Shown here one piece after another: positions 4,661-60,600 of a stretch of 64,000 bases of DNA. The number at the start of each line of letters is the position of its first letter. Position 1 is the first letter of the stretch. The translations under genes were made by a program, and so were the position numbers. The notes beneath the pieces were generated by a model that ran no database searches, was not told where the DNA came from, and saw only the letters and a program-made list of their open reading frames with translations. Source of the stretch: Perna viridis (taxonomy: Eukaryota); NCBI GenBank assembly GCA_037379345.1, contig CM074521.1:24204704-24268703 (forward strand), read 5' to 3'.

Positions 4661-4812
4661 TCTGAAAAATTCCCAAAGATGTCAGAACTGTCAAATTTGC
4701 GATGCAAATTTTTGGTCGTTCCCTCCGCGGGACTCGAACTTGAACTGCTGTAACATCTATTGTAACGCCGCCTACACAAAGTCCAACGCCCTAGAACACT
4801 CGGCCAGCTAGG
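4614..4812 (-). mobile_element. tRNA-related SINE-like repeat ending in (TA)n
   Basis: Minus strand has an A-box-like TGGCCGAGTGT (4806-4796) and a B-box GTTCGAGTCC (4739-4730), followed by a (TA)n run at ~4614-4658; no clean cloverleaf; may extend further 5'. Confidence 0.7.
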
Positions 4813-5384
4813 TTATATAAAAAATATAGCTTTCGCTGGCCGGGTCATTCCTCCTCGTAGAATAAATCTAGGGTTGTAACTCAGTACATGATGTATGGTA
4901 GTACGGGACAGCTCATCTAGGTGTTGTTATGTAGGATAGAGGATCGAATTAACTATGCATGTCATCACAAATCAATATAATACATACGTCAGAGAATGTG
5001 ACCACTCTATTCACTTTACTGTTCCATACAAATGTTACAGATTAGAACACATGTTCCGAAGTAAAATAATATAAAAAAAGAAATATATGCAGCTTCACAA
5101 AACACATATTCTCTTTAGATAAAAGGTTTTTCTTGCTTTTTTACAATACAATAATAAAGATTTTTCTTTATCAGTAATGCCACACATCAAATATAATAAA
5201 TAGCCTTGCGGAGCGGTGCATTACTATGCAAATGTGAACATGATATTAGCTATTCACACTTGAACATAATTGGAAATCCAATTTTAGGTGAACGAAGTTC
5301 TGCCTTCAATACTTGTTTTGAAATATAAAAAAAAATTAAGAGATATTATACCTTGTGCTACCTTTAGGGATCGTACCAAAATGT

Positions 5385-5900
5385 AATTTTATTATCAAAC
5401 TATACGAATATGCGATAATTTTCATTCATCGTCAACTTGTATTTGCGCCAACATTCCTCCAGCACCTGCGCATGGAACTCGTACGTTTTGCAAGAGCTTA
5501 CCGAAACTACGCAGATTTTTTGAACCGTACTAGACTACTAACTGTTAGGATTCTGGAACAAGGTAGAGTCATCACTACAAAATGCTTGTGGTCGTCGTCA
5601 TAGACTCCTTGATAGTTACGATGTATACATCCGTACCATGAAAATCGAATTGTTCCACGTGCCCTAGTTTTCCTTTCCTCTTCCGTCTACATCGGACGGT
5701 ACATTTAATAGCCATCTACAAAAGCAAAGGACGCTAAATATGTAGTGCAACATGCTCTTCTGCTTTTGTTTCTTTGTACATGTTATCTCGTTTTGTTTTT
5801 GTCCATTGTTATTTTTGTGTTTGGTTTTCCTGTCTGCTCTTTGTCCTTGGAATATGACCTTTTGATTGCGGCTCGAATCATGGTTCCTTTGTTTGATCTT
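5385..5900 (+). mobile_element. Second, more decayed copy of the Penelope-like remnant
   Basis: LVRFARAYRNYADFLNRTRLLTVRILEQG aligns with 15609-15900 and is followed by the same 3' block. Confidence 0.68.
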
Positions 5901-7442
5901 TAAGACACAACTTCAAAAGGAACTCGGCGATATCAGAATCGGATTAACTAAACTATTTCTTTCAATTGTAATGACAACATACATAATCACTTTCAGCCTC
6001 GCATTTTTAAGAGGGGGGGGGCAACCAGTTATCGCAAAAACCTCCAAAACCTAAAGGACCCTCTGCTGCTTTGTTCTTAGGAACATTTTGTATTTGTTTT
6101 TAAATTCGATAAATTTACTCAACTTATCATGAACGAGCATTAAAAGGAGCCATCGACGACAGGGGGGTGTCATTATACGTTTGTATCATTTGTTTGTGAT
6201 CATATGCAAATGAATGGTTACCATCGAAAAATTAAAAAGATGCACTAATAGATATAACAATTTATAACATTTTAGATTCAGATAAAAACATACAATATAT
6301 ATATATATATATACAATGACAGGTAAACGAAAATGTTTTGTGTTTTTTTTTCCAGTCCTTTATTCAAATTAGACCCCTGTTAGGTCCTTAATTTTTTAAT
6401 GAAGTACAGCCAGAACCTCTCAGTTCAATCCAAGTATTCATTTGTGACATGAATGTCATAGTTATCCGTATGCTTTTACTAAATTAATGTCTGAACACTG
6501 TTGAAATGCTTGATTTCGGTCCTTGTTTGTCCTTATTTCCTAAGTAAAACGTAAAACGGTATCACAACCTCCAAAAATCGTTCTCATATTTATGATGTAT
6601 GGTTCCTTGTTGTACAGTTAAATATAGTTCCATACACACGTGTTTTGTTGTAATATGAAACCAAATAAAGGGGAATTAAGCATTTGAAAGGATGCAATTT
6701 GAATCAAATATTTTCATTCGTTTCAATATTTGATGTCGGCTCGTGTGGTCTGTTATAATATGTGTCACAGTAGAGTCAGCAAATATTTTGTTAAAAACGT
6801 TTATTCACAGATCAGATCTCTTCATGTCACGTCATGTAAGTATTTGTCAAAATTTCTCTGCATGTCCTAGGATTTTATAGAATTAATTTTATCTTTGATT
6901 GAACATGTTGACCTATGTTGACCTATCTGGATTAAGTTAAATCTCGAATATTTAACCAGATGTACTCATTGTGTGCAAATTCTGGTGATTAGGAATGTCA
7001 CATTTAAGTAATACATGAATGACAGTGTATCTACTTACTACAAATAAAAAAAAGCATTCCGTCTTACTTAACAGATTACAGTCGTAGTCCTTTTCTTTAT
7101 ACGCATCCATTGGATTGAGAACAGGTCCATGCAAAATCATGTAGTTCTTCAAATAGCAATGATATACCGAAGTTAACACGGGAACATTTGATTGTGCAAG
7201 GTTTTTTTCCACATGCACGTGTAAGAAACAATCCCAACACACTTAAAGATGCAGATCCATTATGTTAAAGAAAGATGCTATCGTTGGAAGGTTCGCTTAA
7301 ATTCACTAAAACGTTTTCATTTTTTATCATTTATTTTCTATGTAACCAATCACAAATTTCACTATCCTATTTAAGCACCAAATAATGTTTTATGAGTGTT
7401 CGGATAACACGTTGACTGAAAACTCTGCTTAAACTATCGAAT

Positions 7443-7692
7443 GTATTAGCACCAGCCTGGTTTTTCATATAATCATGCACTAAAATACAATCCAGTCCAG
7501 AAAATAACCACGAACAAAGTCTTTGAGTTTTAATGGTTTCCTATCTAATGCAACTGTGAGTTTCGGTATTAGCACCAGCCTGGTTTTTCATATAATCATG
7601 CACTAAAATACAATCCAGTCCAGAAAATAACCACGAACAAAGTCTTTGAGTTTTAATGGTTTCCTATCTAATGCAACTGTGAGTTTCGGTAT
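7443..7692 (+). repeat. Perfect tandem duplication of 123 bp (2 copies plus 4-bp GTAT overlap)
   Basis: 7443-7565 is identical to 7566-7688 by eye. Confidence 0.95.
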
Positions 7693-9510
7693 ATCATCAA
7701 TGACAGAATTTGGGTAAAAAAAAGTCAGAACACAAGACTGGTGAATACCATAAGTGAGTAGTATCTTCATTTCTCAATTCTATCACCAACAATCTGTGTA
7801 CAACATTTGTTAACATGAATGTTTTGTTCAAACCGTCATGAATGCAATGCTTGAATAAATTAAATGTTCTTATTTTATTTCTGTGACAGGGAATGAAAAT
7901 GGCCATTAGTGTTTTAATTTATAATGTAATATTCAAGTATTATAAATTTTATCTTATTCTTCATTGATGATACTTGTTGTCACATATAGGCTGAAGTGAA
8001 ATCGACTCGACACATTATCTTTAATTTATTATACATTAGATACAACGACGTGTTTTAATGATTTTTTCACGACCTATGTTAAGATACTACTTGACGTAAT
8101 TTAGTTCATTGGTAACTAATTAAATAATTGGAGTGAGATATTGTCATATTTTATTATCATTCCTAGTGATGCACGGTGTTCTGGTAATGAGTAGTACTCT
8201 CTCTGCTACAGAAAGCTGAAGCATTCGGGTTATATTCTGATACATGTAGCAGTCGATTGCTTAGTAAACTGACCTTTGCAGAAATACATAGTAGAGGAAA
8301 CTTGTAATGCCTGTCTTCAATAATTTATTTAATGACAAACACCATTTTTAAATCATACATTTATCAATCGATCAATCCAGTCATAAATCGTACAAAACAA
8401 TAAAACAAAGTGTGAGAAAAGTCGACTACACATGTTACTACCATTGTTTGTGAGACTTGATACCGCGATTTGCAATATATTGTCTTTTTGTTGACATTTT
8501 GCTTTCTTTTACATTTGAGTGAAAAACAATAACGTGATACCATAATGCTGAGTAGAAAAGCCATAATCAAGCATACGTAATATCATACGAACATTATACA
8601 TGCCCCTTTAAATCACAGCATATGGTGTGCATACATCGCAATGTAAAAACATAATCTACGTCGACGAAATATAAACATCTTAATCACAAATTCAGAAGAT
8701 TCAATCAAAATGCATGTACACTTAGCACAGAAGTTAACAGAAGAGTATTTTGCGTCAAGAACGATACTACCAATCGCTATAACTGTTAAGTACCTGTAGG
8801 AACACAAACTTCGGTGTTTAGTGTTCAGCATTATAGTTTTACAGCAAAACTAAAATTTACTAGATGTCTCCTTATGTTTCAAAAGAAATGCAAACACAAC
8901 GCTTCAAAATCATCCACACTGCTTAATTTTGATCAAAATGTAAATTACTAAAGAAAGTAAATGCCCACTGCAACATGACAAATATAATTTTAAATAATAA
9001 CACATCTTGTTTTGCCTTTTTAAACAAATAACGAAAACTATAAACAACATTAACTTTTCGCTTTCAATTGAGCTAAACCGAAAATTTAACGAGTATCAAA
9101 AATTGAATTCAGTGATAAAAAAAACATTAATGTGTATTTTGCCACACCCCAATAGCGTACGTTTCAATCCACTGCACCTCTGGAGGATACGTCATAAATT
9201 CAAAACCATACGTGTGAAAAAAATAATTTCTGAACTCAGATGCACTGATATGCATTTCGTTCGTATGTAAGACAAGACTTGCTAATTTCAGTTAGCAAAA
9301 GATTGGTCTGTAATAGAACAATGGTTCAAATATCCATTCTTAAAGCATTGCTATTGATGACAATGGAGTGATACAATATGGTTATTGAATGAGTATTCTT
9401 TACATAAACACAGCGTTTCTGCGACAGTAAGATAGCACATAAAATAGATTCGTTCTGAACACAAATATAATACAAATTTTACTCCATACTTTTTAACGAA
9501 TATAATCGTT

Positions 9511-48631: not shown

Positions 48632-51600
48632 GTTTTTGTATCCGCATGGATGCGAATTACATAATGTATCAAAAAGTAATCCGTCAGATAATATAATATG
48701 TTAATAAACCTTAATGTTCCGCTATAGGTACTTGGCAACCTTTTCACAGCAAATTCATGATAGTTAAAACTTTGTCAGTTAAAAAAAGAATTTCAAATGA
48801 TAATATAATAATAACACAAATCGACGCTTTACGTACCACTCCAGCTAAGGATCAAAATGTGATTTATGGGTAGAAAGCCTACATATTTTTATTTTTTATA
48901 TTTTGTTTGAAATGTCATAGAAAACAGAAATTAACATGTGGTTTTTCATATAACCCGTGCTCTTTGGAGATAAAAATTATATAGAATGCACTGTAGATTT
49001 CAAAATTAAGGGCGATAACCCTGTAAATCACGCTCAAATACAATAGAATCTACTGGATTTTCAATGTTGATTATCTCCTAAGAGCAGGCAGATTTGAATG
49101 AATAATTACTCATTTCATAGTATAGACCCATAAAACAACTTAATTACAAAAATAAAAATATGAAGCCTTTTTTGGGGTGTATCACATTTTTCAGATTTTG
49201 CATGATTCTTACAAAGACAGCTACTTCATATTTGAAAAGATCACACAATTGGCGAAACTAAATGGATGTTAGACAAAAAGTATCAATTTCGTGTTAAACG
49301 TAGTTCTCAATTTATCTTATTTGATGCAACGATTTGTGCTATAATTTGATGTAATGGTAAACTTGTGAAATTCAAATCTGAAGCAGTAACACCAGAATGT
49401 AAGGGTGTCTATATTGTCACCGACTATTACAATTTTAGTTAGTATGTGCACTCAAATATCTATAATTTACACAAACATTTTATATCGGCTAACTTTGTAG
49501 GAATTTAAGGACACTTAATTTTCTAGAATAAAATGCTTTGCTGAGCCAGCTTGTAAGACCGCAAAGGTTGAACCCTTAACAGTTCGGGCAAGGATTGACA
49601 CACGATACAACTTGATACATATAACAAATTCGGTTGCGATTAGACATTTTCGATAGGATAAAAATTTGAGCAGAATCAAAGTGGTCCATTTATTTTTAAT
49701 TCATACATAATTCAAGTTACAATCCTTATCAACCATTCCTAGACTTCCGATGGAGGTTTGGCACTTCGTGGTACAGTATGGCAAAATAATATATATTCAC
49801 TTTCAGTTAAGTTTTATTCTTAAATAGTTCAAATGACAACTCCCAAAATCAATTCCAACTTACCCTGTGTAGACAATGGTACAACTTCATAAAGATCCAT
49901 TCACATAGTTTATGATAAAGTTATAATTGCCCGGAAATCATGAAAATGTTTGTTTCTGGCCAGTTTTTGGTCCCTAATTCCTAAAAGGTTCAAGTCACAA
50001 CCCCCAAAATCGATCCCAGATTTCCTTTTGCTGGTATATCAACCTTTGGATCAATTTTATAAAGATCTTTCACTTATAAACCGGTTATAATCATGTTATT
50101 GTCAAGCTATCATAAAAGTGCATGTTTCGGGCACCTATTTGACCTTACCTCTTACAAGGTTCAAGCCACAACCCAAAAATCAAGCCTAGCTTTCCTTTTT
50201 GTGGCATGGTTTCCGGTGGTATAATTTCATTAGGATCCATACACTTACATCCTTGTGTTATCGTCTAGAAATCAAATTATCTAAGGACGACGATGAAGAC
50301 GATGCAGACAACGACAGCATGATTTCATTATACGACCGCAAGTTCATGTGTTGCCGTCGTATGAAAATGTTTCCCTGATAGACATAATTTTTCTGCAAGG
50401 GCCTTCTAATCATAGATGGGTCCGATCCCCTTTTTCAAGCTCTAAAATTTACTTGATTATAATGAAGTAAACTGGATATCAAAGGCGCTATTCCGAATTT
50501 CAGCATCCGCCATTGCTAGTATAGAAAAAGATTTTTCAAATGCTGGGTAATGAAGTATTAACTGTCTTTTAAGAACCAGTTGATTACAGAAGTAGCAGAA
50601 GGCTAACTTGATATTGTTCATAAATATTTGTTACTTAGTAATAGATAAACAATCATCGCAGACGATATTTTCGCGAGCCAGCGAATAGCAAAAATAACAG
50701 CGTTGCCGAACTTATTGGTAAAGCAATACAAACCTCAACAGTTTGTAAGAAACACATGTGCTAAAATCTGTGCAAAGAATTCAGATAATTACATAAATCA
50801 CACATCTTAGTAATGCTCGTATCTTATACTTTTCAATTTCTTGTATTTATAAGAAATCATCGTATGTCACCAATTACATAATTATGTCATATAAATCTCC
50901 TACAAGTACGCAAAGGATGTATTAATCACAAATGTTACGAACAACGATTAAAAAACATGCATACGGTTCGTAAAATTGAAAACTGAACATGCATGCATCA
51001 GACGTTTGAGCCTCGTGCAGATCCGGGTGTTAAAAGAATAGGCCTGCAGCAGCACTAAGCTTGTCGTAAAAGGCGACTAAATAGTGCTCAGAACCCTAGC
51101 CAGGGGCTAGAGCGCTCTGCCCACAGAGCAACTGGGATGTGTGCCCCAGGTGGTGGAATGGGGTACCCCTGGCGTGTTACATGCTGGGGTTGTCAGGCTA
51201 TAATACGGAAAACCTGATTGCCAACCATAGTGGTGCACCGTGCTGGGAAAAATGCCACGTTCCTCGCACTCTAAAGAACCCTACTGTGGTATTCTCCCCT
51301 GAGTAGGAACCATAGGGTTCCGCCACAGAAGGCTAAATTGCCCGACCCTACCCACCTCTCCCCATTTCCAGTGGCAATCAAAATTTGTCGACCCCATTGT
51401 CCTTGTGTCCCATCCCTTTTTCATTTCATCATCGTTTCATGTTCATTTTATCATCAATTTCATGTTCATCGTCTGAATATAGCTGAAATAGTGCTGCTCG
51501 GACGTTAAACCCCAACAAACAAACAATCAGACGTTTGATTGATATTTTATAAGAATTGCTTCTTTGTGTTGACTGTGTTTAATCTTGCGTTCAGTGTTTG

Positions 51601-54600
51601 GCTTTATTGTTAATAAATGCGAACAAGGCAAAATCGTTTCAGGAATTTTATACAAGGAACCATTAGATCAAAAGCGCAAACAAAATGTGCAATATTTCCA
51701 ATAGAGCCTTGGTTTTGAAGGTCATCAATGGTGAATAGGAAAAGAAAGAGACTCAGACAAGCATGTACAAACCAAATAAATGGCAAGTTCTTGTTGTTTC
51801 TAGTTTTTGTCATGATATTACGTCGCTAGCGAAGCTCAATGTATCTTATGGCTATAGGGCAAGTCAGTACCGTATCAAGGCCAATTGGGAGTAAATGCAT
51901 TTACAGCTTCCTATTATAGTAAAATGGTCAATATCCTGCAAACTTATTTTACGAAGAGTGCAGTTGCTCAATTTGTAAATATGGTAAGGCATTGATCGTT
52001 GATAAAGACCGGAAGTGAGTTTCGGCGGAAGTAACTCATTTTTCAACCCTTCTTCCTTATTGCTTTTCAAGTGTTTTTATGTTCATCATTTGCTGTTAAT
52101 TTTTTAAATAACAAATTACTTACAATTAAACCATAAAAGACTTCCTGAAAAATCTGCGCTTGGTTTTACCAAGTTATAAATCGAACATTAAGCTCTATAT
52201 TTAGAAGAGTTCCCGCCATTACGATGGTACTGTATGCTATAATTAGACCACGTTATAGTCTAGCGTTGGTAAAGTTATAGTGATTTCATTACCAATATCA
52301 TGATTTTGTAAAGAAAAACGACGTACAATTGACTATTACGAGATCATCAGCTCGTAAAACTGAGGTATATATTTGAATCACGCAATGTGCGAAATATTCA
52401 ATATTCAAAAGTCAACACTGCAACTGATGTGCTTGTCTCTTAATTAAAACGGATTAAGAAACTTGTACGTTCCTATCATATACATGTAGGTATAAGTCTC
52501 CCGACCTTTGCTATCATTGATCGTTTGCCTCGAATAATGTTTCACGTATTGCTGTGGTATGTAAAACCACTGGGATGAATTAAGAGACTGTCCATTTAGA
52601 AACCAGGCAGTTCCTATCACATGGATGGCACATGGTAAATTTTATCGAACTGAATTTTTTTTTTGTTCCAATGTAATGTTTACATCATTTATAATGTATG
52701 TGCAATAGCACAAGTTTTTTTTTGGTTTTTTTTAATAATATTATTCTAAACTTCCCTATTAAGTCAACAAAATTTTGCAGGAAAATGAAAGAGTTATCTC
52801 CCTTTTTCAATGAATTTGAACCGTGGCAGTGAATCAACCAACATTCTTTGAGAAAGGATGCATATGTGATATGAAACAGATGATGTTTTATTAAAAGCAT
52901 TTCAAATTTTGTTATGTGCCACCCACTGCCTGGTTTTTGCGTTGACACCCATTTAAAGAGAAATATAAATAAAACGCAACTAGCTTCCCTAAAACTGAGT
53001 GACATTTCATTAAGATATATACCTTTACAAGTTTATAAAGATCTAAACTGATGTCTTATTGGGAATGGTACTTGTACCTTCTCCAACATAAGATAATGAA
53101 TAACACATCTTAATTATTGTCAATAAAGATTCCCAGATTCATCCAGAGTATCAGCAGAGTAATAACACGAAACAAAATTGATTAGTATATTACTTGTGGA
53201 GACTTAATTAATTGTCTTTGATATGATAGCTTTATAGTCACTAAAAATAACACGGCTTTATTTACAGTTCCTTTAATACCGGTAGACTCATCCTTCATAA
53301 TCTCCAAACAAATTCTTCGACAGACAAATATGCCAACTCATTTCAAGGGGGAATCTGGTTATCTTCTATACATTTTGGACCATCAGTAGAGAGCTTAAAC
53401 TAAGCCAACTATTTACAATATATATGCGCCTACTAAGTGCATACGTCCTTGTACATCTGATCATTTTTGTACCGATTGTTCATTTGGTTGCACCGATATC
53501 TAAGCTCTGTTTAACACCAAGGCTGTAATTTTATATACACGGAATTGTGATTCTTCTTTTAGTGTACACAGGACCCTTCAAGTAAAGAGGTTTCTTTTAA
53601 AAGAGCATCTTTTAGTTTTGTTTTTGGGAGTGGAAGGGTATTTCATTTATTTATTTATTTATTTTTTTATTTATTTATATTTGTTCGTTTGTTTATTTCT
53701 TTCTTGTTGTTTTGTTCTGGCTATATAATTTTAGATTTTCTCTGTTGCTACTGAATTAAACATTCTGACTATTACCAAGCGACTTCTAGGATCAAACTAT
53801 TCATTTCATTTCAAACAGCAACAAGTTCAAACAGTTGAATTTTATACACCTTAAAATATTACACTTAATTGTGTGAAACCCAAATCCCAATAAGAGACTT
53901 GTCGGCCAGTGTTTTGTGTTCAGACTTACTGCCATGTTTATTTTATAATCGTGTAACTTCTTGGGATACGGTTTAATATGAAGCAAAGCAAAAAATATCA
54001 TAACAACAGACCGGGAATATGTCGGTAGGAGCACTATTGGGCTTCATGGACCAAATTATTTCTCTAACAATAAACAATTCTTTATTACACGACGACAATG
54101 ACTACATGGGAAATATGATATTAAAGAATAAAGATATACAGCAAAAATGTTGAAATTCAATTCCGTCTCGTCCAGTGACTGTTACTTAATGTAGCAATTG
54201 CATCAATAAAATTCATTTTATATAATAGCACATTGAAATCTGATTATCATTAAAACACGCCTACGTCACATTGCGGAGATATATTGCTTCATGTACTTCT
54301 TAAAATTCTAACGACTCTATACATAGTATTTATGCTTAACAATGTATTAAGTTTTTAAATCTTGCAATTCAATTTTTTTCTGAAACTACAAGTAAGTCTG
54401 AGTCAAAGTGGATCTAAGGAAGCCTTTGGTCCGCTTCTCCTCGCTTTATGACAGAAAAGTCTGGTCAACTATACAGAAAAAAATAGGAAATCACTGGACT
54501 CAGAAGTTGTCCTCCCCTATTTAACCAGCCCGCATAGCCACACATCCCCACCCCCAATCATTTCGGAGTTTCTGGATGCGCTGCTGTTAACTGGTCCATG

Positions 54601-57600
54601 GACGACCAATCTAATTCAGAGGAGTTGGGTAGAATTAAGATAAATGGGTTGGGATGCAAACTCACGAAGGAATATCTTACCCAAGATATGTCTACAACCA
54701 TTGACAAATGTCACATCTATAGACCAATCATGGCCTTATTCAAGATAAAACTGTATGTCTTTAATCCACGATCTATGCCATATCCACATACACGTTTGCC
54801 TATCTCGTCTTGCCCAATATACATGTAAATCGACAATCTTTGATGTATAACGCACCCATGGCAATCATGATAAATCTTAAATCCTTAATCTACAGACTCG
54901 TTTGCCAATCATGGCAAAGTCCAAGATATGTCTACGACAATTGATCTGTGCCATACCTTAACACCCATTTACCCATCATGATCTTAGCAATTCCCTCAAT
55001 ATGTCAATCTTAGGCCTATTCCACAACTACTGACCCGTTTCCTCATCATAGACATACCCAAAATATGTCTACGATAATTGATCTCTGCCACATGCACCTA
55101 CAAACCCGTTTGTCCATCACTACCTTATCCTATATATGGTTGGATATATATCGTGACCATATCCACAATATGCCTACAGTAGTTGATCTCTGCCACACCT
55201 ACAGATCTGTTTGCCCATCATGGCCTTAACCAAGATATGTTTACGTGATCTCTTACATGTACAAATTTACAGACCATTTGCACATCATGGACTTACCCAC
55301 AATATGTCTATGTAACACCCATACAGACCAGTTTGCTAATCATGTCCTTACTCAAGATAAGTTTAAATGATTTCTGACACAACTACAGACTCGTTTGCAC
55401 ATCAATGACTTAACCACGATATGTCTATGTAAAACCTACATAGACCCGTTTAATTGCGGATCATGGCCAAACCCAAGATACATGTATGTCTACAATAATT
55501 GATCTCTTCCTCACCTACAGACCAGTTTGCCCATAATGGCATAACCCAATACAATGTATATGTTTACATGATCTCTGTCACACCTAGAGACGCGTTTGCC
55601 CACCGTGATATTATACGTAAGATATGTCTACAATCATTGACCTAGCTATGCCACAGACATATAGACATGTTAGCCGATCATGGCCTTACCTGACCTAGCT
55701 ATGCCACACTATACAGACATGTTTGCCCATCATGGCCTTACCTAAGTCTGAGTAATTGTCATTGGCGTAGGGCATTGCCATCCTCGGAATAAAACGGTTA
55801 TAAAAACAAGAAATCAATTTACTTCAGTAATAAAGGAAGGTCATCATGAGACCATTATCTGTACACGTAAAAAAGTAAAAGCAAAAAGATGTTATTGATG
55901 TACAGAGCTGCATATAAATGCCATTTCTGGTTTAATGGTTAGCCAGCTAGCCATAATAAATGTTTCTATTACGCAAGCTACATATTACTGAGACGGGTCG
56001 ATTCTTGGACATTATATTTGGTCTTTTGTAGATGATATAATATAAATGGTATCTTTTCATTGGCTAAAGAAACTTATTTTTATATATTTGACAAAGGAAT
56101 AATTTATTGGCCAATTTTATCTCCTTGTACATTCTTTAGCTAGTTCAGTTAAAATTCCGATCACCATGATCACTCTACCTCTTCCGGCCAGTCATGCACT
56201 GCATTTCAAATTCTAACTACAAATGTATATAGATATATTCTGGTCAGTAATTGCATTTCAAATCCTACTCAGGTCTAAATTCCAGATCTAGACATTGCAT
56301 TTTCAATTTAATCTCTTTATTTTGGGTCAGAAATTACTTTTTTTTTAGTTCATATCACTTTCCCGAGCAGCCATTAGATTGATGATATAACCTGAAGACC
56401 GTCGATTTCACGGTGGCAACTTGAGTTGACGTGGGACGCGTAAGCGGAGCTGGTAACCGAACATTTACGACAATTACGATTGTCTGCAATTGGAAATATA
56501 TTTGTGAAAATAATAGCTTGGGATCCGGGCTCCTGACTAATCATCATACATTATGAGTGTTCTTGCAGTCAGCAAAAGTTGATGAACTTCAAATTACAGA
56601 ATAAAAAAAATATTTACAGAAAAAATCTGATGAGTCAATTTTTTTTACATGCGAGTGAAAATTACATAAAAATTACATTGATTTTTTTTTTTAAGAAAAA
56701 CAAAAAATGTACATTTTTTCATTTTTCACTACCGCGATCACGAAAGTTTTCATATTAAGTTTTAAGGAGATAAATTTGAAGTGATGTAATTTCTTTGCCA
56801 ATCAGCTTAAAGCTTCTTAACAACAGCATGAAAAACACAAAATACTTGTCAAATCAAAATTTGAGATGTATTAATTTAATCAAAGAAACTCTTGAATTAA
56901 ATTCGATGACAAAAACTATGGCAATATCATTAACTCTAGTGACATCATAGTACCGTAGCTCTTTTCAAGCGCATTTCGGTCTTAAATTTGATAATAAGCA
57001 ACTGTAACCATTCAATGGTTTCCAATTTTACTTTAAAACCTGTTATTTGAAAGACAAATTATTTATTCATTTCAGCGTCTTGTTAACGTTTTTTTTTTAA
57101 TTCAGTACGATACGATTTTCGATAGAATGTCCTTAGATGGAAGTACAAGTGTTATATCGCCTGGTGTACATACGGTATATACTGCAGTAAAGGATTATAC
57201 TAGGTTCTTAAAACCGGTCACGATACAAAATTCAAACCAGTAAACAATGTTCTAAAACGTATTTTTCTTCAAAGTGTAGGCTTTCTTTAACAAGACGAAA
57301 ACTCCCCTTGCTCAAGTTCATTTGCAGGTAAAAAAGATTTTTCTCGGTATCCTCCCCCAACTCAAATTTTCTATACCAGTCAATCAGGATCGTTTGAACT
57401 TAAATTGTGCTCTCAAGGATCAGAGAAATATCACAAATTGAGATTTGTCTTAAACCAGGCTAAGTACATACATTCAATAAATGTGAGACATATTGTTAAA
57501 CATTATAGAACTACATTGGGTGTCCATATGTAAGCGTTTTAATAAGCTAGTGGCCAAGATGTTGTCACGTCAAACAAGGTCATCTCAACCCCTAAAAATG

Positions 57601-60600
57601 CACACCCTGATGGGGTTGTAAGGATCCCCACTTCATCGTAACGTCGACGATTTATGCGTCGGACAACACAAACAGATTGATAGACATTGTTCGGATTGTA
57701 ATAGAAATTACGTAAACATGATTATTTCTTTGGAAAATTTCTATTAATCGCCATTTTTCATTAATTGTTCCTAAAACGAGACTGGTAATCAGTCATATTC
57801 CTACAATAATTTGACTAGAATAAGTATAATTTGCATTTAAAATTTAAAACTAGGCTCTCTCCACTCTTTCGAAACAAACTTGTTGGCTAGATCATGCGAT
57901 CACAGTATTTATACATTTAGAGTTACACTGCTTCAAAAAGATATATGCCCATGCTGTTCCGGGCGTCAAAAGAATAGGCCCGCAGCAGCGCTAAACTTGT
58001 CGTAAAAGGCGACTAAATAGTGCTCAGAACCCTGACCAAGTGTAGGGCGCTCTGCCCACAGAGCAACTGGGTTGTGTGCCCAAGGTGGTGCAATGGGGTA
58101 CCTCTGTCATGCTACATGCTGGGGTTGGCAGACCATAATACGGAAAACCTGACCGTAAACAATAGTGGTGCAACGTGTTGGGAAATATGCCACGTTCCTC
58201 GCACGTTAAAGAACCCTTCTGTGGTATTCTATCGGAGTAAGAACTCCTGGTCTCCGCCATAGGAGGCTAAATTGCCCTACCTTACCCACCTCTCCCTATT
58301 TCCAGTGGCAATCAAAATTGGTCGACCCAATTATCCTTGAGTTCCATCAAATTTTTCATTTCATCATCATTTCAAGTTTATTTTAAATGTATCAATGTAT
58401 CATCCATTTCATGTCAATCATCTGAACACGTCTGAAATATTGCTGCTGGCGTTAAACCCCAACAATCAATCAATCAAAAAGAGATGTACTTGATTGCTTT
58501 GTACAGGTTTTGGATGACATTCAAAAGGTTTATTTATGATTCCAAAGGTTCCATATTCTGGTAGACGGTAGCGACTTCTGACTTTAATTGGTTTAATAAT
58601 GTTATAATCACCAGATAAGTCCGAATTTCTCAGTTTGACCCTTCAATCTTCCTGTTCTTATGAACACTGATACGATTGCCAAACCCGACATACCAGTAGA
58701 AAAAGATTGCAGGGACAGAGGAAATTCTGATTTATCATAAAATCGAATTATGAATGAACTTACTGAATATTTTTAACAATAGTGTGTTATCGTAATTTTT
58801 CATCTCTTATTGAAATTGCTGACAAAGACATTATAGACGGGGTGCCGTCTTTCCGCCTTCTGTTTAACACCGTATTTAGCGGACTTTTTTTCATGCCATG
58901 CATGCACGGCGACCTGTCCTCTAACCACTTATGTATTTATACATGCAGCTTGAAAAACTTTGCACTCAGATAATTTCCATATCATCTATATTATACACAA
59001 AAAAGGCAAAACATGAGACAGGACCAAGTACTGCAAAAATTGTTTGATTCAATCAGTCCTGAAAATGTGTTTCCATGCTAAAATTATCACAAGGTCTTTT
59101 TGGCTTACTTTTGTTCTTAGAATATTATTACGCTATTTCTAAGTAATTTAAGCAAGTGTAAATAAAGCTTACGGTACAGGATTTGCCCATTCATCAAATC
59201 TACCACGGCTGTGCTAATATTACTTATTACAGATTATCTCAATCAATCTCCCTAAACAATTATCTGCTACAATACAAATCCGATGAGATACGATCCGCTT
59301 AAATAGTCATATAAATAGGTCTGAGAGATTCTATGATTATGTCTCAAATTGGGACACATTTTTGTTTCGTACGACCCTTATGCGGTAAAATGAAATAATA
59401 GTAAAATAAAATTGGCATTTCTGAACAGAAGGTTTCTTGACAAAAACGCTACAAGTTCAAACAAACCACGTCTCAAGCTAGTTTCTTTTGCTTGCTCCCT
59501 TAGTTGGGATTGCTATTTTTACTTAAATGATTAATACAATTTCTAACACCGTCATATTATTGTACATGTAACAATGATGTACAATGTATCTGAAATTAAA
59601 AGACGAAAATATATAGTAATGGATTCATCAGAGATACAATGAGACGAATCAGGAAAACTTTCATTGCTTTCGCTGATTCTAAATTTTCCACATCTCATTA
59701 TTTCAAGTATACAAGTGCATGCTATACATTTGTACATAAAAAGGGAACATAATCCAAACAAATTTCTAATGTTCCCAGTTTTCTAAGGAGTCCGAGTTTA
59801 TTTTTGTTGCTGTGTACGTATTATTTTGGTTATTTTATGTTCTTTGTTGTAAGTGTCTGTTTCCAATGTTTGGTCTCTGTCCCTGGTTTACATTCTTCTG
59901 ATTTCCGCTAAAATCTTGGTTCTCTTGATTACTCTATTATATACAATGTATCAGGAACACGTATTTAACAGGAAATACCAAAATCTTAGGCAAAGTAAGA
60001 AAAACAAAGGAGAACAACTAGAACTACCTCTACAAGGAATTTTAACATTTTAAAATGTAGCGGGTACCGTAACAATTCTTTTGCGAAGATTATTGAGACA
60101 AAAATTTAAGACAATGCGCACAACCTCAATATAACGATCTAATACTGGGAAAAGTTTCATAAAACCCAGTGAGTAGGAATTAGATTTAGCTCAAATGTGA
60201 ATTTCCAACCCATCGTTAAGTCTACGAAGCATGCAACCTTTACCAATCCACTTTCGTGTCCTGTTTCAAAGGTCATCTTGGTTCATTTCAAATTAATACA
60301 GCAAGATTGAAACAAACTCTGTTAGATCTGCAAGTGATAATGTCGCTATAAAAAGCAATTCAAATTAAAGTCTTTTCAAGTATTTAGAGCTTGATATAAT
60401 ATGTTTGTCAACAACAGGTGCTTTCAGTTTTATCAGTTGTTCAATACGATTATATTAAACACTTGCATGCTGAGCAAAGTCTTTGAAAAACCAATCACTG
60501 CAAATAATTTAAGCATGCAAACTCTAGATTATTTGAAATGTCACTGACATCGCAGTAGGATGTTAAGTTTGAAAAGTCTATGCATTTTCAATCAATTTGT

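What the first reader, a model, noticed from the sequence alone, without database searches (positions are those of the whole stretch)
51010..58473. Two full-length retroposons with no tRNA head, the same 5' start and a structured-RNA head
Seen: copies at 51010-51525 and 57947-58473 are each bounded by a 13-14-bp TSD, end in a 4-nt microsatellite tail, and start at the same homologous position (GCC...). No Pol III A/B boxes are visible. The head folds as stacked hairpins. Copy 2 has TGCTG/CAGCA plus CGGGC/GCCCG around AAAAGAATAG. A stem AGCACTA/TAGTGCT (AGCGCTA in copy 2, a G-U-compatible change) encloses the invariant GTCG-TAAAAGG-CGAC-TAAA. Next come CTAGC/GCTAG (replaced by CCCTgAC/GTAGGG in copy 2) and GCTCTG/CAGAGC. 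Established: TSD plus simple-repeat tail indicates LINE-mediated retroposition; most SINEs have tRNA/5S/7SL heads; some non-LTR elements make their 5' ends with self-cleaving ribozymes. From memory, unverified: TGTCGTAA(A/G)AGGCGACTAA also occurs in arthropod repeats. Inference: the head is a conserved RNA device (ribozyme, internal promoter or RT-recruitment module) defining a SINE-like class that is not tRNA-headed.
Basis: partly seen in the sequence, partly recalled or inferred. Interest (0 to 1): 0.8.

Follow-up and report, generated by a model that had tools for sequence, protein, structure and literature searches.

The report
SINE with a LINE-derived structured head
These are two copies of a very abundant ~515-base retroposon that a LINE enzyme copies and that starts, not with a tRNA, but with an ~85-base folded RNA module shared with LINE 5' ends; this element type was described in molluscs in 2016, and what the module does is still unknown.

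Summary
Both copies (51010-51525 and 57947-58473) have target-site duplications, 4-nt repeat tails and the same 5' start. Genome-wide the family has thousands of copies that start at the same base. No tRNA, 5S, 7SL or other Rfam family matches the head.

The kind is already known. Matetovici et al. 2016 (PMC4758252) described mollusc "LP-SINEs", whose first ~68-70 nt come from the 5' end of Nimb and RTE LINE 5' UTRs. An earlier report of this scan, on another copy of this family, reached the same reading.

What I add:
- The invariant 19-mer of the head occurs in at least 120 animal-derived metagenome contigs.
- There the heads again sit at the 5' terminus of TSD-flanked SINE-like elements, and at one LINE-like element.
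- Two helices covary strongly across families (87% of cells paired versus 27-38% in slid controls; 0 of 500 shuffles reach the observed score). A third, invariant hairpin lies inside the second helix.
- A model built only from metagenome heads recovers this genome's heads.

The head is therefore a conserved structured RNA. It matches no known ribozyme, and neither an HDV-like fold nor a 5' pseudoknot is supported. Promoter, ribozyme and protein-platform roles all remain open.

Verdict: a new member of a known kind, with moderate interest.

The parts
50997..51009 (+). Left target-site duplication of copy 1 (13 bp)
   Evidence: It is identical to 51526-51538.
51010..51525 (+). Copy 1 of the ~515-bp retroposon, full length
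   Evidence: The best genome-wide matches are 95-97% identical and cover nt 1-516.
51010..51092 (+). Head module of copy 1: the ~85-nt conserved structured RNA shared with LINE 5' ends
   Evidence: Model R1, built only from metagenome heads, matches 51011-51092 at 48.7 bits, E 9e-10.
51016..51048 (+). Hairpin A: 5' strand 51016-51022, 3' strand 51042-51048, with a conserved loop containing UCCGGG and AGAAUAG
   Evidence: It appears in the MFE and centroid folds. All 6 pairs show changes on both sides across families. Copy 1 carries one G>A mismatch in the stem.
51051..51088 (+). Stem B (51051-57 with 51082-88) enclosing an internal loop and hairpin C
Evidence: All 5 modelled pairs covary and 91.9% of cells pair.
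51062..51080 (+). Invariant 19-mer that includes hairpin C (GUCG / UAAAAGG / CGAC) and UAA
   Evidence: There are 2 matches in the window against 0.01 expected. The same 19-mer, with R at one position, occurs in at least 120 metagenome contigs.
51417..51421 (+). Internal T5 run
   Evidence: A T5 run would terminate Pol III before the tail, which argues against Pol III transcription.
51476..51481 (+). AATATA, a variant poly(A)-signal-like hexamer upstream of the tail
   Evidence: It is absent in copy 2. PMC4758252 notes such hexamers in LP-SINEs.
51500..51525 (+). 3' tail box (GGACGTTAAACC) followed by the (CAAA)n microsatellite
   Evidence: The same tail box precedes the (CTCA)n tails of head-bearing SINE-like elements in metagenome contigs. 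The tail 24-mer occurs 10,328 times in the genome.
51526..51538 (+). Right target-site duplication of copy 1
57933..57946 (+). Left target-site duplication of copy 2 (14 bp, 12 of 14 matching)
57947..58473 (+). Copy 2, an older full-length copy that is 83% identical to copy 1 and has a (CAAT)n tail
57947..58028 (+). Head module of copy 2
   Evidence: R1 matches at 34.3 bits, E 4e-6.
58474..58487 (+). Right target-site duplication of copy 2

Best explanation
**What it is (odds about 0.85-0.9).** Both copies belong to a young, very abundant family of non-autonomous non-LTR retroposons of the 'LP-SINE' kind. A partner LINE's reverse transcriptase recognises the 3' tail box plus the (CAAA)n repeat and copies the RNA into a nicked target. 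That produces the TSDs.

**The head.** The first ~85 nt are not a small-RNA (Pol III) head. They are a module shared with the 5' ends of LINE 5' UTRs. The module is a structured RNA made of:
- hairpin A, a 6-bp stem that closes a conserved loop;
- stem B, which encloses an asymmetric internal loop;
- the invariant hairpin C.

**How it most likely works (inferred, odds about 0.4).** The module fixes the 5' end by acting as an internal, Pol II-type promoter that travels with the element, as in I, jockey and L1Tc-type LINEs. Its transcript fold is additionally needed in cis at the RNA level, for stability, RNP assembly or 5' completion.

**Shown:** the element anatomy, the copy number, the uniform 5' end, the cross-taxon conservation and the covariation.
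**Inferred:** the polymerase, the promoter role and the partner LINE.
For: **Anatomy and copy number.**
- TSDs, tails and the shared start are seen.
- Thousands of copies exist. The 5'-terminal and core 24-mer counts are nearly equal (6,702 versus 6,875), so there is no 5' attrition inside the head.

**No Pol III head.** No tRNA or other Pol III head is found, and an internal T5 run is present.

**Literature.** Mollusc SINEs whose first ~68-70 nt match the 5' end of Nimb-17_LMi, I-3_DR and RTE-9_CPB are described in PMC4758252. That paper mentions TSDs, tandem-repeat tails and poly(A)-like hexamers, and it proposes Pol II.

**Own data.**
- The invariant 19-mer occurs in at least 120 metagenome contigs.
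- The heads there start with the same (G/A)CCCCGUG, directly after unrelated flanks, and TSDs are visible for L066 and L120.
- One head lies about 230 nt upstream of an ORF1-like frame and 2.2 kb upstream of a LINE endonuclease domain on the same strand (L184).
- Model R1, built without any sequence of this genome, hits this genome's heads at 50-59 bits.

**Structure.**
- On the model-fitted alignment, 87.1% of cells pair versus 27-38% when partners are slid. There are 132 double-sided changes versus 18-44, and 0 of 500 shuffles reach the observed score.
- The MAFFT-only alignment gives the same picture: 89.5% versus 31-46%.
- RNAalifold predicts the three stems on its own.
Against: - I could not compare the head directly with the Repbase LINEs named in the paper, because neither the sequences nor the figures are held. 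Identity with the published LP head therefore rests on description, length and position.
- Covariation shows selection on RNA pairing, which a DNA promoter alone does not need.
- No Inr- or DPE-like motif sits at the expected distances.
- No transcript 5' ends could be read. All available runs are contigs, and the 5' junction there is joined to many different flanks.
- The partner LINE in this genome was not identified.
- Single-sequence folding energies are not exceptional (z from -1.5 to +0.8).
Confidence: 0.6

Rival explanations
1. The head is a self-cleaving ribozyme of a class not yet described. The element is transcribed as part of longer host or read-through transcripts. The module then cuts immediately 5' of its own first base, which releases an RNA with the exact 5' end seen in all copies.
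For: - There is precedent at LINE 5' ends: HDV-like ribozymes in R2, RTE and L1Tc (PMC3185411, listed) and twister variants heading Perere-3, with TSDs abutting the cleavage site (PMC8501958).
- The element's first base coincides with the first base of a covarying, highly conserved module that has about 35 near-invariant unpaired or paired positions.
- According to PMC4758252 the module also heads an RTE, a clade known to rely on co-transcription. That paper itself raises the L1Tc promoter-plus-ribozyme parallel.
- In two lineages the module sits upstream of a tRNA-like part that could have supplied a promoter.
Against: - No Rfam ribozyme family matches, even at E<=10, on this copy or on 8 related loci.
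- The strand order does not fit HDV: there is no room for P3/L3 between the candidate P1 strands.
- The conserved twister loop (GUCCCAAGC) is absent.
- A long-range P1 (nt 1-7 with 149-155) exists only in this genome's family and not in the F1 or F3 families.
- The 5' pseudoknot is not supported.
- Contigs of putative RNA runs still join the 5' end to varied flanks, although they may be DNA.
Confidence: 0.2
2. The head is a binding platform for LINE-encoded proteins or a host factor. It is kept by LINEs and SINEs alike because it helps RNP assembly, protects the 5' end, or promotes the template jump that completes full-length insertion. Transcription would be supplied otherwise.
For: - RNA-level selection is shown: compensatory changes maintain both stems, while the loop sequences stay invariant.
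- The fraction of copies with an intact 5' end is high: head-to-tail 24-mer ratio is 0.65-0.67, and there is no attrition within the head.
- The same head is combined with the same tail box in distant hosts, as expected if both ends serve one machinery.
- From established knowledge: the R2 protein binds a structured 5' RNA.
Against: - According to PMC4758252 the module heads LINEs of two different clades, Nimb and RTE. That fits a clade-specific protein partner poorly.
- This reading does not explain how new copies get transcribed from exactly nt 1.
Confidence: 0.2
3. The head is a strongly diverged tRNA, 5S, 7SL or snRNA head with a cryptic Pol III promoter. The family would then be an ordinary SINE.
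For: - Most SINEs are built this way.
- A loose A-box-like 11-mer lies at element nt 142.
- PMC4758252 describes a tRNA-derived remnant inside the pectinoid relatives.
Against: - ARAGORN and Rfam find nothing, even at E<=10.
- No B box is found within 2 mismatches, and the A-box-like site is about 140 nt from the start.
- An internal T5 run would stop Pol III.
- The same head precedes LINE coding sequence in L184.
Confidence: 0.03

Closest known systems
LP-SINEs and pectinoid MESC SINEs (Matetovici et al. 2016, Genome Biol Evol, PMC4758252)
   Same: - Short, TSD-flanked elements with a tandem-repeat tail.
- No small-RNA head at the 5' end.
- The first ~70 nt are shared with the 5' end of LINE 5' UTRs.
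- About 520 bp long in scallops.
- A poly(A)-signal-like hexamer lies before the tail.
- Found in molluscs.
   Different: - The host here is another genome; other notes of this scan call it mussel-like.
- I could not align to the published consensi.
- The 88-bp CT-rich segment described after the head in scallops is not evident here.
- The paper reports sequence conservation of the head only, without a covariation-supported fold.
Pr77 / L1TcRz of trypanosomatid L1Tc, NARTc and ingi (PMC3383444, PMC3185411)
   Same: A ~77-nt module at the very 5' end is shared by otherwise unrelated LINEs and by their non-autonomous derivatives. It defines the RNA 5' end.
   Different: Pr77 is shown to be both a promoter and an HDV-like ribozyme. 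Here neither activity is shown, the HDV-like fold is not met, and there is no sequence similarity.
Twister T-variants heading Perere-3 (RTE clade) in Schistosoma (PMC8501958)
   Same: - A structured RNA sits at the LINE 5' terminus with TSDs abutting it.
- The layout is outwardly similar: a helix, an internal loop with UAAA-type purines, then a hairpin.
   Different: The conserved twister loops and pseudoknots are absent, and there is no Rfam twister match.
HDV-like ribozymes of R2 and RTE elements (one is reported for an RTE of this same genome by earlier scan note s1-753431)
   Same: They are 5'-terminal structured RNAs that set the element's first base.
   Different: The nested double pseudoknot cannot be threaded onto this head, and there is no match to Rfam HDV-like models.
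SINEU (snRNA-headed SINEs that share their head with Tx1 LINEs; Kojima 2015, PMC4494074)
   Same: SINE and LINE families share the same unconventional 5' head.
   Different: The SINEU head is a recognisable U1 or U2 snRNA. This head matches no cellular RNA family.

Membership tests
Classical SINE (Pol III-transcribed, small-RNA head) | Short and non-autonomous, with a LINE-type tail and TSDs | tested here: met
   The element is 515 bp, has (CAAA)n or (CAAT)n tails and 13-14-bp TSDs. No ORF was examined inside it.
Classical SINE (Pol III-transcribed, small-RNA head) | A 5' head derived from tRNA, 5S, 7SL or snRNA, with internal A and B boxes | tested here: not met
   ARAGORN finds none. Rfam finds none at gathering score or at E<=10. 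No B box is found, the A-box-like 11-mer lies only at nt 142, and there is an internal T5 run.
LP-SINE (PMC4758252) | A TSD-flanked short retroposon with 3' tandem repeats | tested here: met
LP-SINE (PMC4758252) | [quoted passage not shown] | not testable with these tools
   The Repbase sequences and the paper's figures are not held, and no supplements are held. Indirect support exists: the same head model matches the 5' side of a LINE-like element, L184, which has an ORF1-like frame and an Exo_endo_phos_2 domain on the same strand.
LP-SINE (PMC4758252) | A poly(A)-signal-like hexamer upstream of the tail repeat | tested here: inconclusive
   AATATA is present in copy 1 at 51476-51481 and absent in copy 2.
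Pectinoid MESC SINE (PMC4758252) | A 68-bp LINE-derived head, then an 88-bp CT-rich segment, a tRNA remnant and the 95-bp MESC domain | not testable with these tools
   No MESC consensus is available. The length is similar (515 versus 520 bp). A CT-rich segment is not evident after the head.
HDV-like ribozyme | A nested double pseudoknot (P1-P2-P3-L3-P1.1-P4) with cleavage 5' of P1 | tested here: not met
   No Rfam HDV, CPEB3 or drz match at E<=10. Only 2 nt lie between hairpin A's 5' strand and the only local partner of the 5' end, so P3/L3 cannot be placed. The alternative long-range P1 is not conserved in other families.
Twister / T-variant ribozyme | Conserved L1, L2 and L4 nucleotides (such as GUCCCAAGC) and two pseudoknots | tested here: not met
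   The motifs listed in PMC8501958 are absent from the head, and there is no Rfam twister match.
Conserved structured RNA (general) | Helices maintained by compensatory changes across independent families | tested here: met
   Searches support stems A and B. Stem C never varies, so it says nothing either way. The 5' pseudoknot was tested and is not supported.

The most novel reading that the evidence does not exclude
The ~85-nt head is a new class of RNA device that generates 5' ends. It would be either a self-cleaving ribozyme or a signal for a cellular endonuclease. It would have been exchanged among Nimb and RTE LINEs and many SINEs of molluscs, of the unidentified animal hosts behind the metagenome contigs, of arthropods and of vertebrates.
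Probability: 0.2. Interest if true: 0.85.

Novelty: new member of a known kind. Interest (0 to 1): 0.5.

Why it matters
SINEs are defined by Pol III heads taken from small RNAs. Elements that instead carry a LINE 5'-UTR module are the main known exception, and they have hardly been studied since 2016.

This work shows that the module is a structured RNA under selection across distant animal hosts. It always sits at the first base of the element, and it is paired with a conserved tail box. Together these turn an old open question (promoter, ribozyme or protein platform) into a set of direct bench tests, with a concrete fold and compensatory mutants to try.

If the module cleaves itself, it would be a new ribozyme class and a widespread one. 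If it is a portable Pol II promoter with an RNA function, it explains how a SINE can spread to thousands of copies without Pol III.

Tried and rejected
- **tRNA or other small-RNA head:** rejected.
- **HDV-like fold, local or with a long J1/2 (P1 nt 1-7 with 149-155):** rejected. It cannot be threaded, and the long-range pairing is not conserved in other families.
- **5' pseudoknot (CCCCG with CGGGG in the loop of hairpin A):** attractive by eye, with one compensatory case in L073. Helix length is no better than in composition-preserving shuffles (4.25 versus 3.83), and the helix shows little covariation. Not supported.
- **Thermodynamic stability as evidence:** z-scores run from -1.5 to +0.8, which is not informative.
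- **RNA 5' ends from public runs:** only Logan contigs were on offer, labelled RNA by guess. They show the element deep, the unique flanks empty, and the 5' junction joined to many flanks. There is no information on starts.
- **Partner LINE and other head-bearing families in this genome:**
  - A pattern search that excluded the SINE body gave mostly mutated SINE copies plus a few odd contexts.
  - L048, a head followed by 1.5 kb without an ORF, is not a LINE.
- **ORFs downstream of heads in metagenome contigs:** most are host genes or have no family. Only the L143/L184 locus gave LINE features.
- **Text search of papers:** the 15-mer core was not found in any paper. No supplements are held for the two SINE papers.


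Full report
**1. Observation**

Copy 1 (51010-51525) is bounded by a perfect 13-bp target-site duplication and ends in (CAAA)n. Copy 2 (57947-58473) is bounded by a 14-bp duplication with two mismatches and ends in (CAAT)n. The copies align end to end from the same first base and are 83% identical.

No tRNA is found in the window. No Rfam family reaches its gathering score. At E<=10 the 600 bases around copy 1 give only two chance-level matches, neither a tRNA, 5S, 7SL, snRNA nor ribozyme.

A motif scan finds one loose A-box-like 11-mer at element nt 142. It finds no B box within two mismatches, a T5 run at nt 408, and AATATA 40 nt before the tail of copy 1.

**2. Family in this genome**

The window lies in a 723-Mb, 46-contig assembly. 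Copy 1 gave 5,888 first-look candidates. The 40 that were scored are 95-97% identical and begin at query nt 1-10. In the 32 near-full-length copies extracted, unrelated flanks and TSDs directly abut the same start, (G/A)CCCCGTGCAGG.

Exhaustive exact-word counts, with reversed-pattern controls of 0:

| 24-mer | exact matches |
|---|---|
| nt 3-26 (extreme 5' end) | 6,702 |
| nt 54-77 (head core) | 6,875 |
| 3' tail | 10,328 |

Copies that keep the head core therefore almost always keep the very first bases. About two thirds as many heads as tails survive. This is the usual picture of mostly full-length SINE copies plus some 5'-truncated ones, and incidental fragments in the fetched loci agree. 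The family is young and large.

**3. What is already known**

An earlier report of this scan on another copy of this family (s1-759812) pointed to 'LP-SINEs'. I read the source, Matetovici et al. 2016 (PMC4758252). It reports the following:
- Scallops carry 520-bp TSD-flanked SINEs whose first 68 bp resemble the first 68 bp of the 5' UTR of the locust LINE Nimb-17_LMi.
- Littorina, Haliotis, Ostrea and Saccostrea have SINEs with the same head. A Ceratitis SINE has it too.
- The authors propose a LINE promoter, possibly Pol II. They name L1Tc's Pr77 (promoter plus HDV-like ribozyme) as the parallel and call for experiments.

I found no later paper on this head. So the kind of element and the origin of its head are published.

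I could not align this head to the published sequences, because figures and supplements are not held. Other notes of this scan call the genome mussel-like. I therefore do not claim that this is the scallop family itself.

**4. Relatives outside this genome**

These contigs are animal DNA: they carry C2H2 zinc-finger, LRR and PSMD12/CSN4-type genes. The host animals are not identified by the tools.

About 50 sequence clusters of heads appear. The full heads again begin with (G/A)CCCCGUG directly after flanks that differ from copy to copy. Elements with visible TSDs are seen in L066 and L120.

Several of these short elements end in the same tail box as here (GACGTTAAACC), followed by a different microsatellite.

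One head heads a LINE-like element. All of the following features lie on one strand in L184:
- the head at 4699-4789;
- a 273-aa ORF1-like frame at 5021-5842;
- broken frames after that;
- an Exo_endo_phos_2 endonuclease domain at 7034-7759.

A feature search of the ORF1-like part points to arthropod-type clusters, with a PRE_C2HC cluster at 0.88. That is a lead only.

**5. Structure**

Across families the helices change sequence but keep their pairing:

| helix | this genome | other families |
|---|---|---|
| Stem A | UGCAGG/CCUGCA | GUGGGU/ACCCAC, GCGGGC/GCCCGC, GCUGGC/GCCAGC |
| Stem B | GCGCUA/UAGUGC | CCUGG/CCAGG, CCAGG/CCUGG, CCUCCU/AGGAGG, CCCAU/AUGGG |

The enclosed UGUCGUAARAGGCGACUAAA stays fixed.

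I built covariance model R1 from 14 metagenome heads only. It finds this genome's heads over the full model at 50-59 bits, E about 1e-8 genome-wide. It also finds both window copies.

On the model-fitted alignment of 107 distinct heads:

| measure | observed | controls |
|---|---|---|
| cells paired | 87.1% | 27-38% when partners are slid |
| cells with changes on both sides | 132 | 18-44 (slid) |
| covariation score | 0.240 | at most 0.047 (slid) |
| shuffles reaching the observed score | 0 of 500 | - |

All 11 pairs of stems A and B show changes on both sides. Stem C never varies, so it carries no covariation evidence.

That alignment leans towards the model. I therefore repeated the count on the plain MAFFT alignment: 89.5% paired versus 31-46%. 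RNAalifold predicts the same three stems on its own.

Folding energies of single sequences are ordinary, so the evidence is comparative and not thermodynamic.

**6. Ideas that failed**

- **5' pseudoknot.** The 5' CCCCG can pair with CGGGG in the loop of hairpin A. Helix length is no better than in shuffled loops, and there is almost no covariation.
- **HDV-like topology.** It needs a P3 hairpin between the two P1 strands, and only two bases are available. A long-range P1 (nt 1-7 with 149-155, with a G-U at the top) exists in this genome's family but has no counterpart in the F1 or F3 families.
- **Twister.** The conserved twister loops listed in PMC8501958 are absent.
- **Rfam.** It reports no ribozyme on eight related loci.
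- **Public runs.** They were available only as contigs and cannot show RNA starts.

**7. Reading**

The element is a LINE-dependent retroposon. Its 3' tail box and microsatellite recruit a partner reverse transcriptase. Its 5' ~85 bases are a LINE-derived, structurally conserved RNA module that always supplies the first base.

What the module does is not shown. My estimates:
- **About 0.4:** a portable internal Pol II-type promoter whose transcript fold also acts in cis. This is supported by the need of thousands of dispersed copies for their own transcription, the purine start, the internal T5 run and the literature.
- **About 0.2:** a new self-cleaving or otherwise processed 5' end.
- **About 0.2:** a protein-binding platform for RNP assembly or 5' completion.
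- **The remainder:** other roles.

**8. Verdict**

The class, however, was described in 2016 and had been recognised before in this scan. It is a new member of a known kind.

The added value is the cross-taxon, covariation-supported fold and the exclusion of the known ribozyme folds. Together these make the open functional question directly testable.

Noticed in passing
G000:C15:5518022-5572573 (not in the window): About 18 matches of the head core, each followed by TAAATCC(A/G)AA instead of the SINE body. They lie at roughly 2-3.6 kb spacing on one strand, which suggests a tandem array of a longer unit that contains the head.
   Followed up: no
G000:C1:9836031-9837566: Four 5'-terminal 24-mers lie at exactly 504-bp spacing on one strand, so SINE copies stand head to tail in a tandem array.
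   Followed up: no
G000:C1:3.33-3.55 Mb: Copies are packed very densely here, with dozens of head and tail words within about 200 kb on both strands.
   Followed up: no
L066:2498-2810, L120:230-571, L172:1395-1660: The ~300-nt SINE-like elements in metagenome contigs share both the head and the tail box GACGTTAAACC with this genome's SINE, but they end in (CTCA)n-type repeats. The same two LINE-derived ends are therefore combined with different bodies in distant hosts.
   Followed up: partly
L125:741-900, L117:1199-1360 (also L076, L137, L142): In one metagenome family the head is fused directly to a segment with A-box-like (TAGTCTAGTGG) and B-box-like (GGTTCTACCCC) motifs. ARAGORN and Rfam do not call it a tRNA. 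The layout parallels the scallop MESC SINEs described in PMC4758252.
   Followed up: partly
L153:778-922, L069:867-1007, L086:121-257, L121:1143-1287: One head family carries a ~60-nt insertion, which includes a (TAAG)n microsatellite, inside the loop of hairpin A. The stems are still found by the model, so this loop tolerates large insertions.
   Followed up: no
L044:1447-1640: This copy has a partial internal duplication of the head. The head core is followed again by nt ~10-70 of the head.
   Followed up: no
window 51240-51307: Another first-stage note (s1-780820) proposes a pistol-like pseudoknot inside the body of copy 1. I did not examine it. The Rfam scan at E<=10 shows no pistol match there.
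   Followed up: partly
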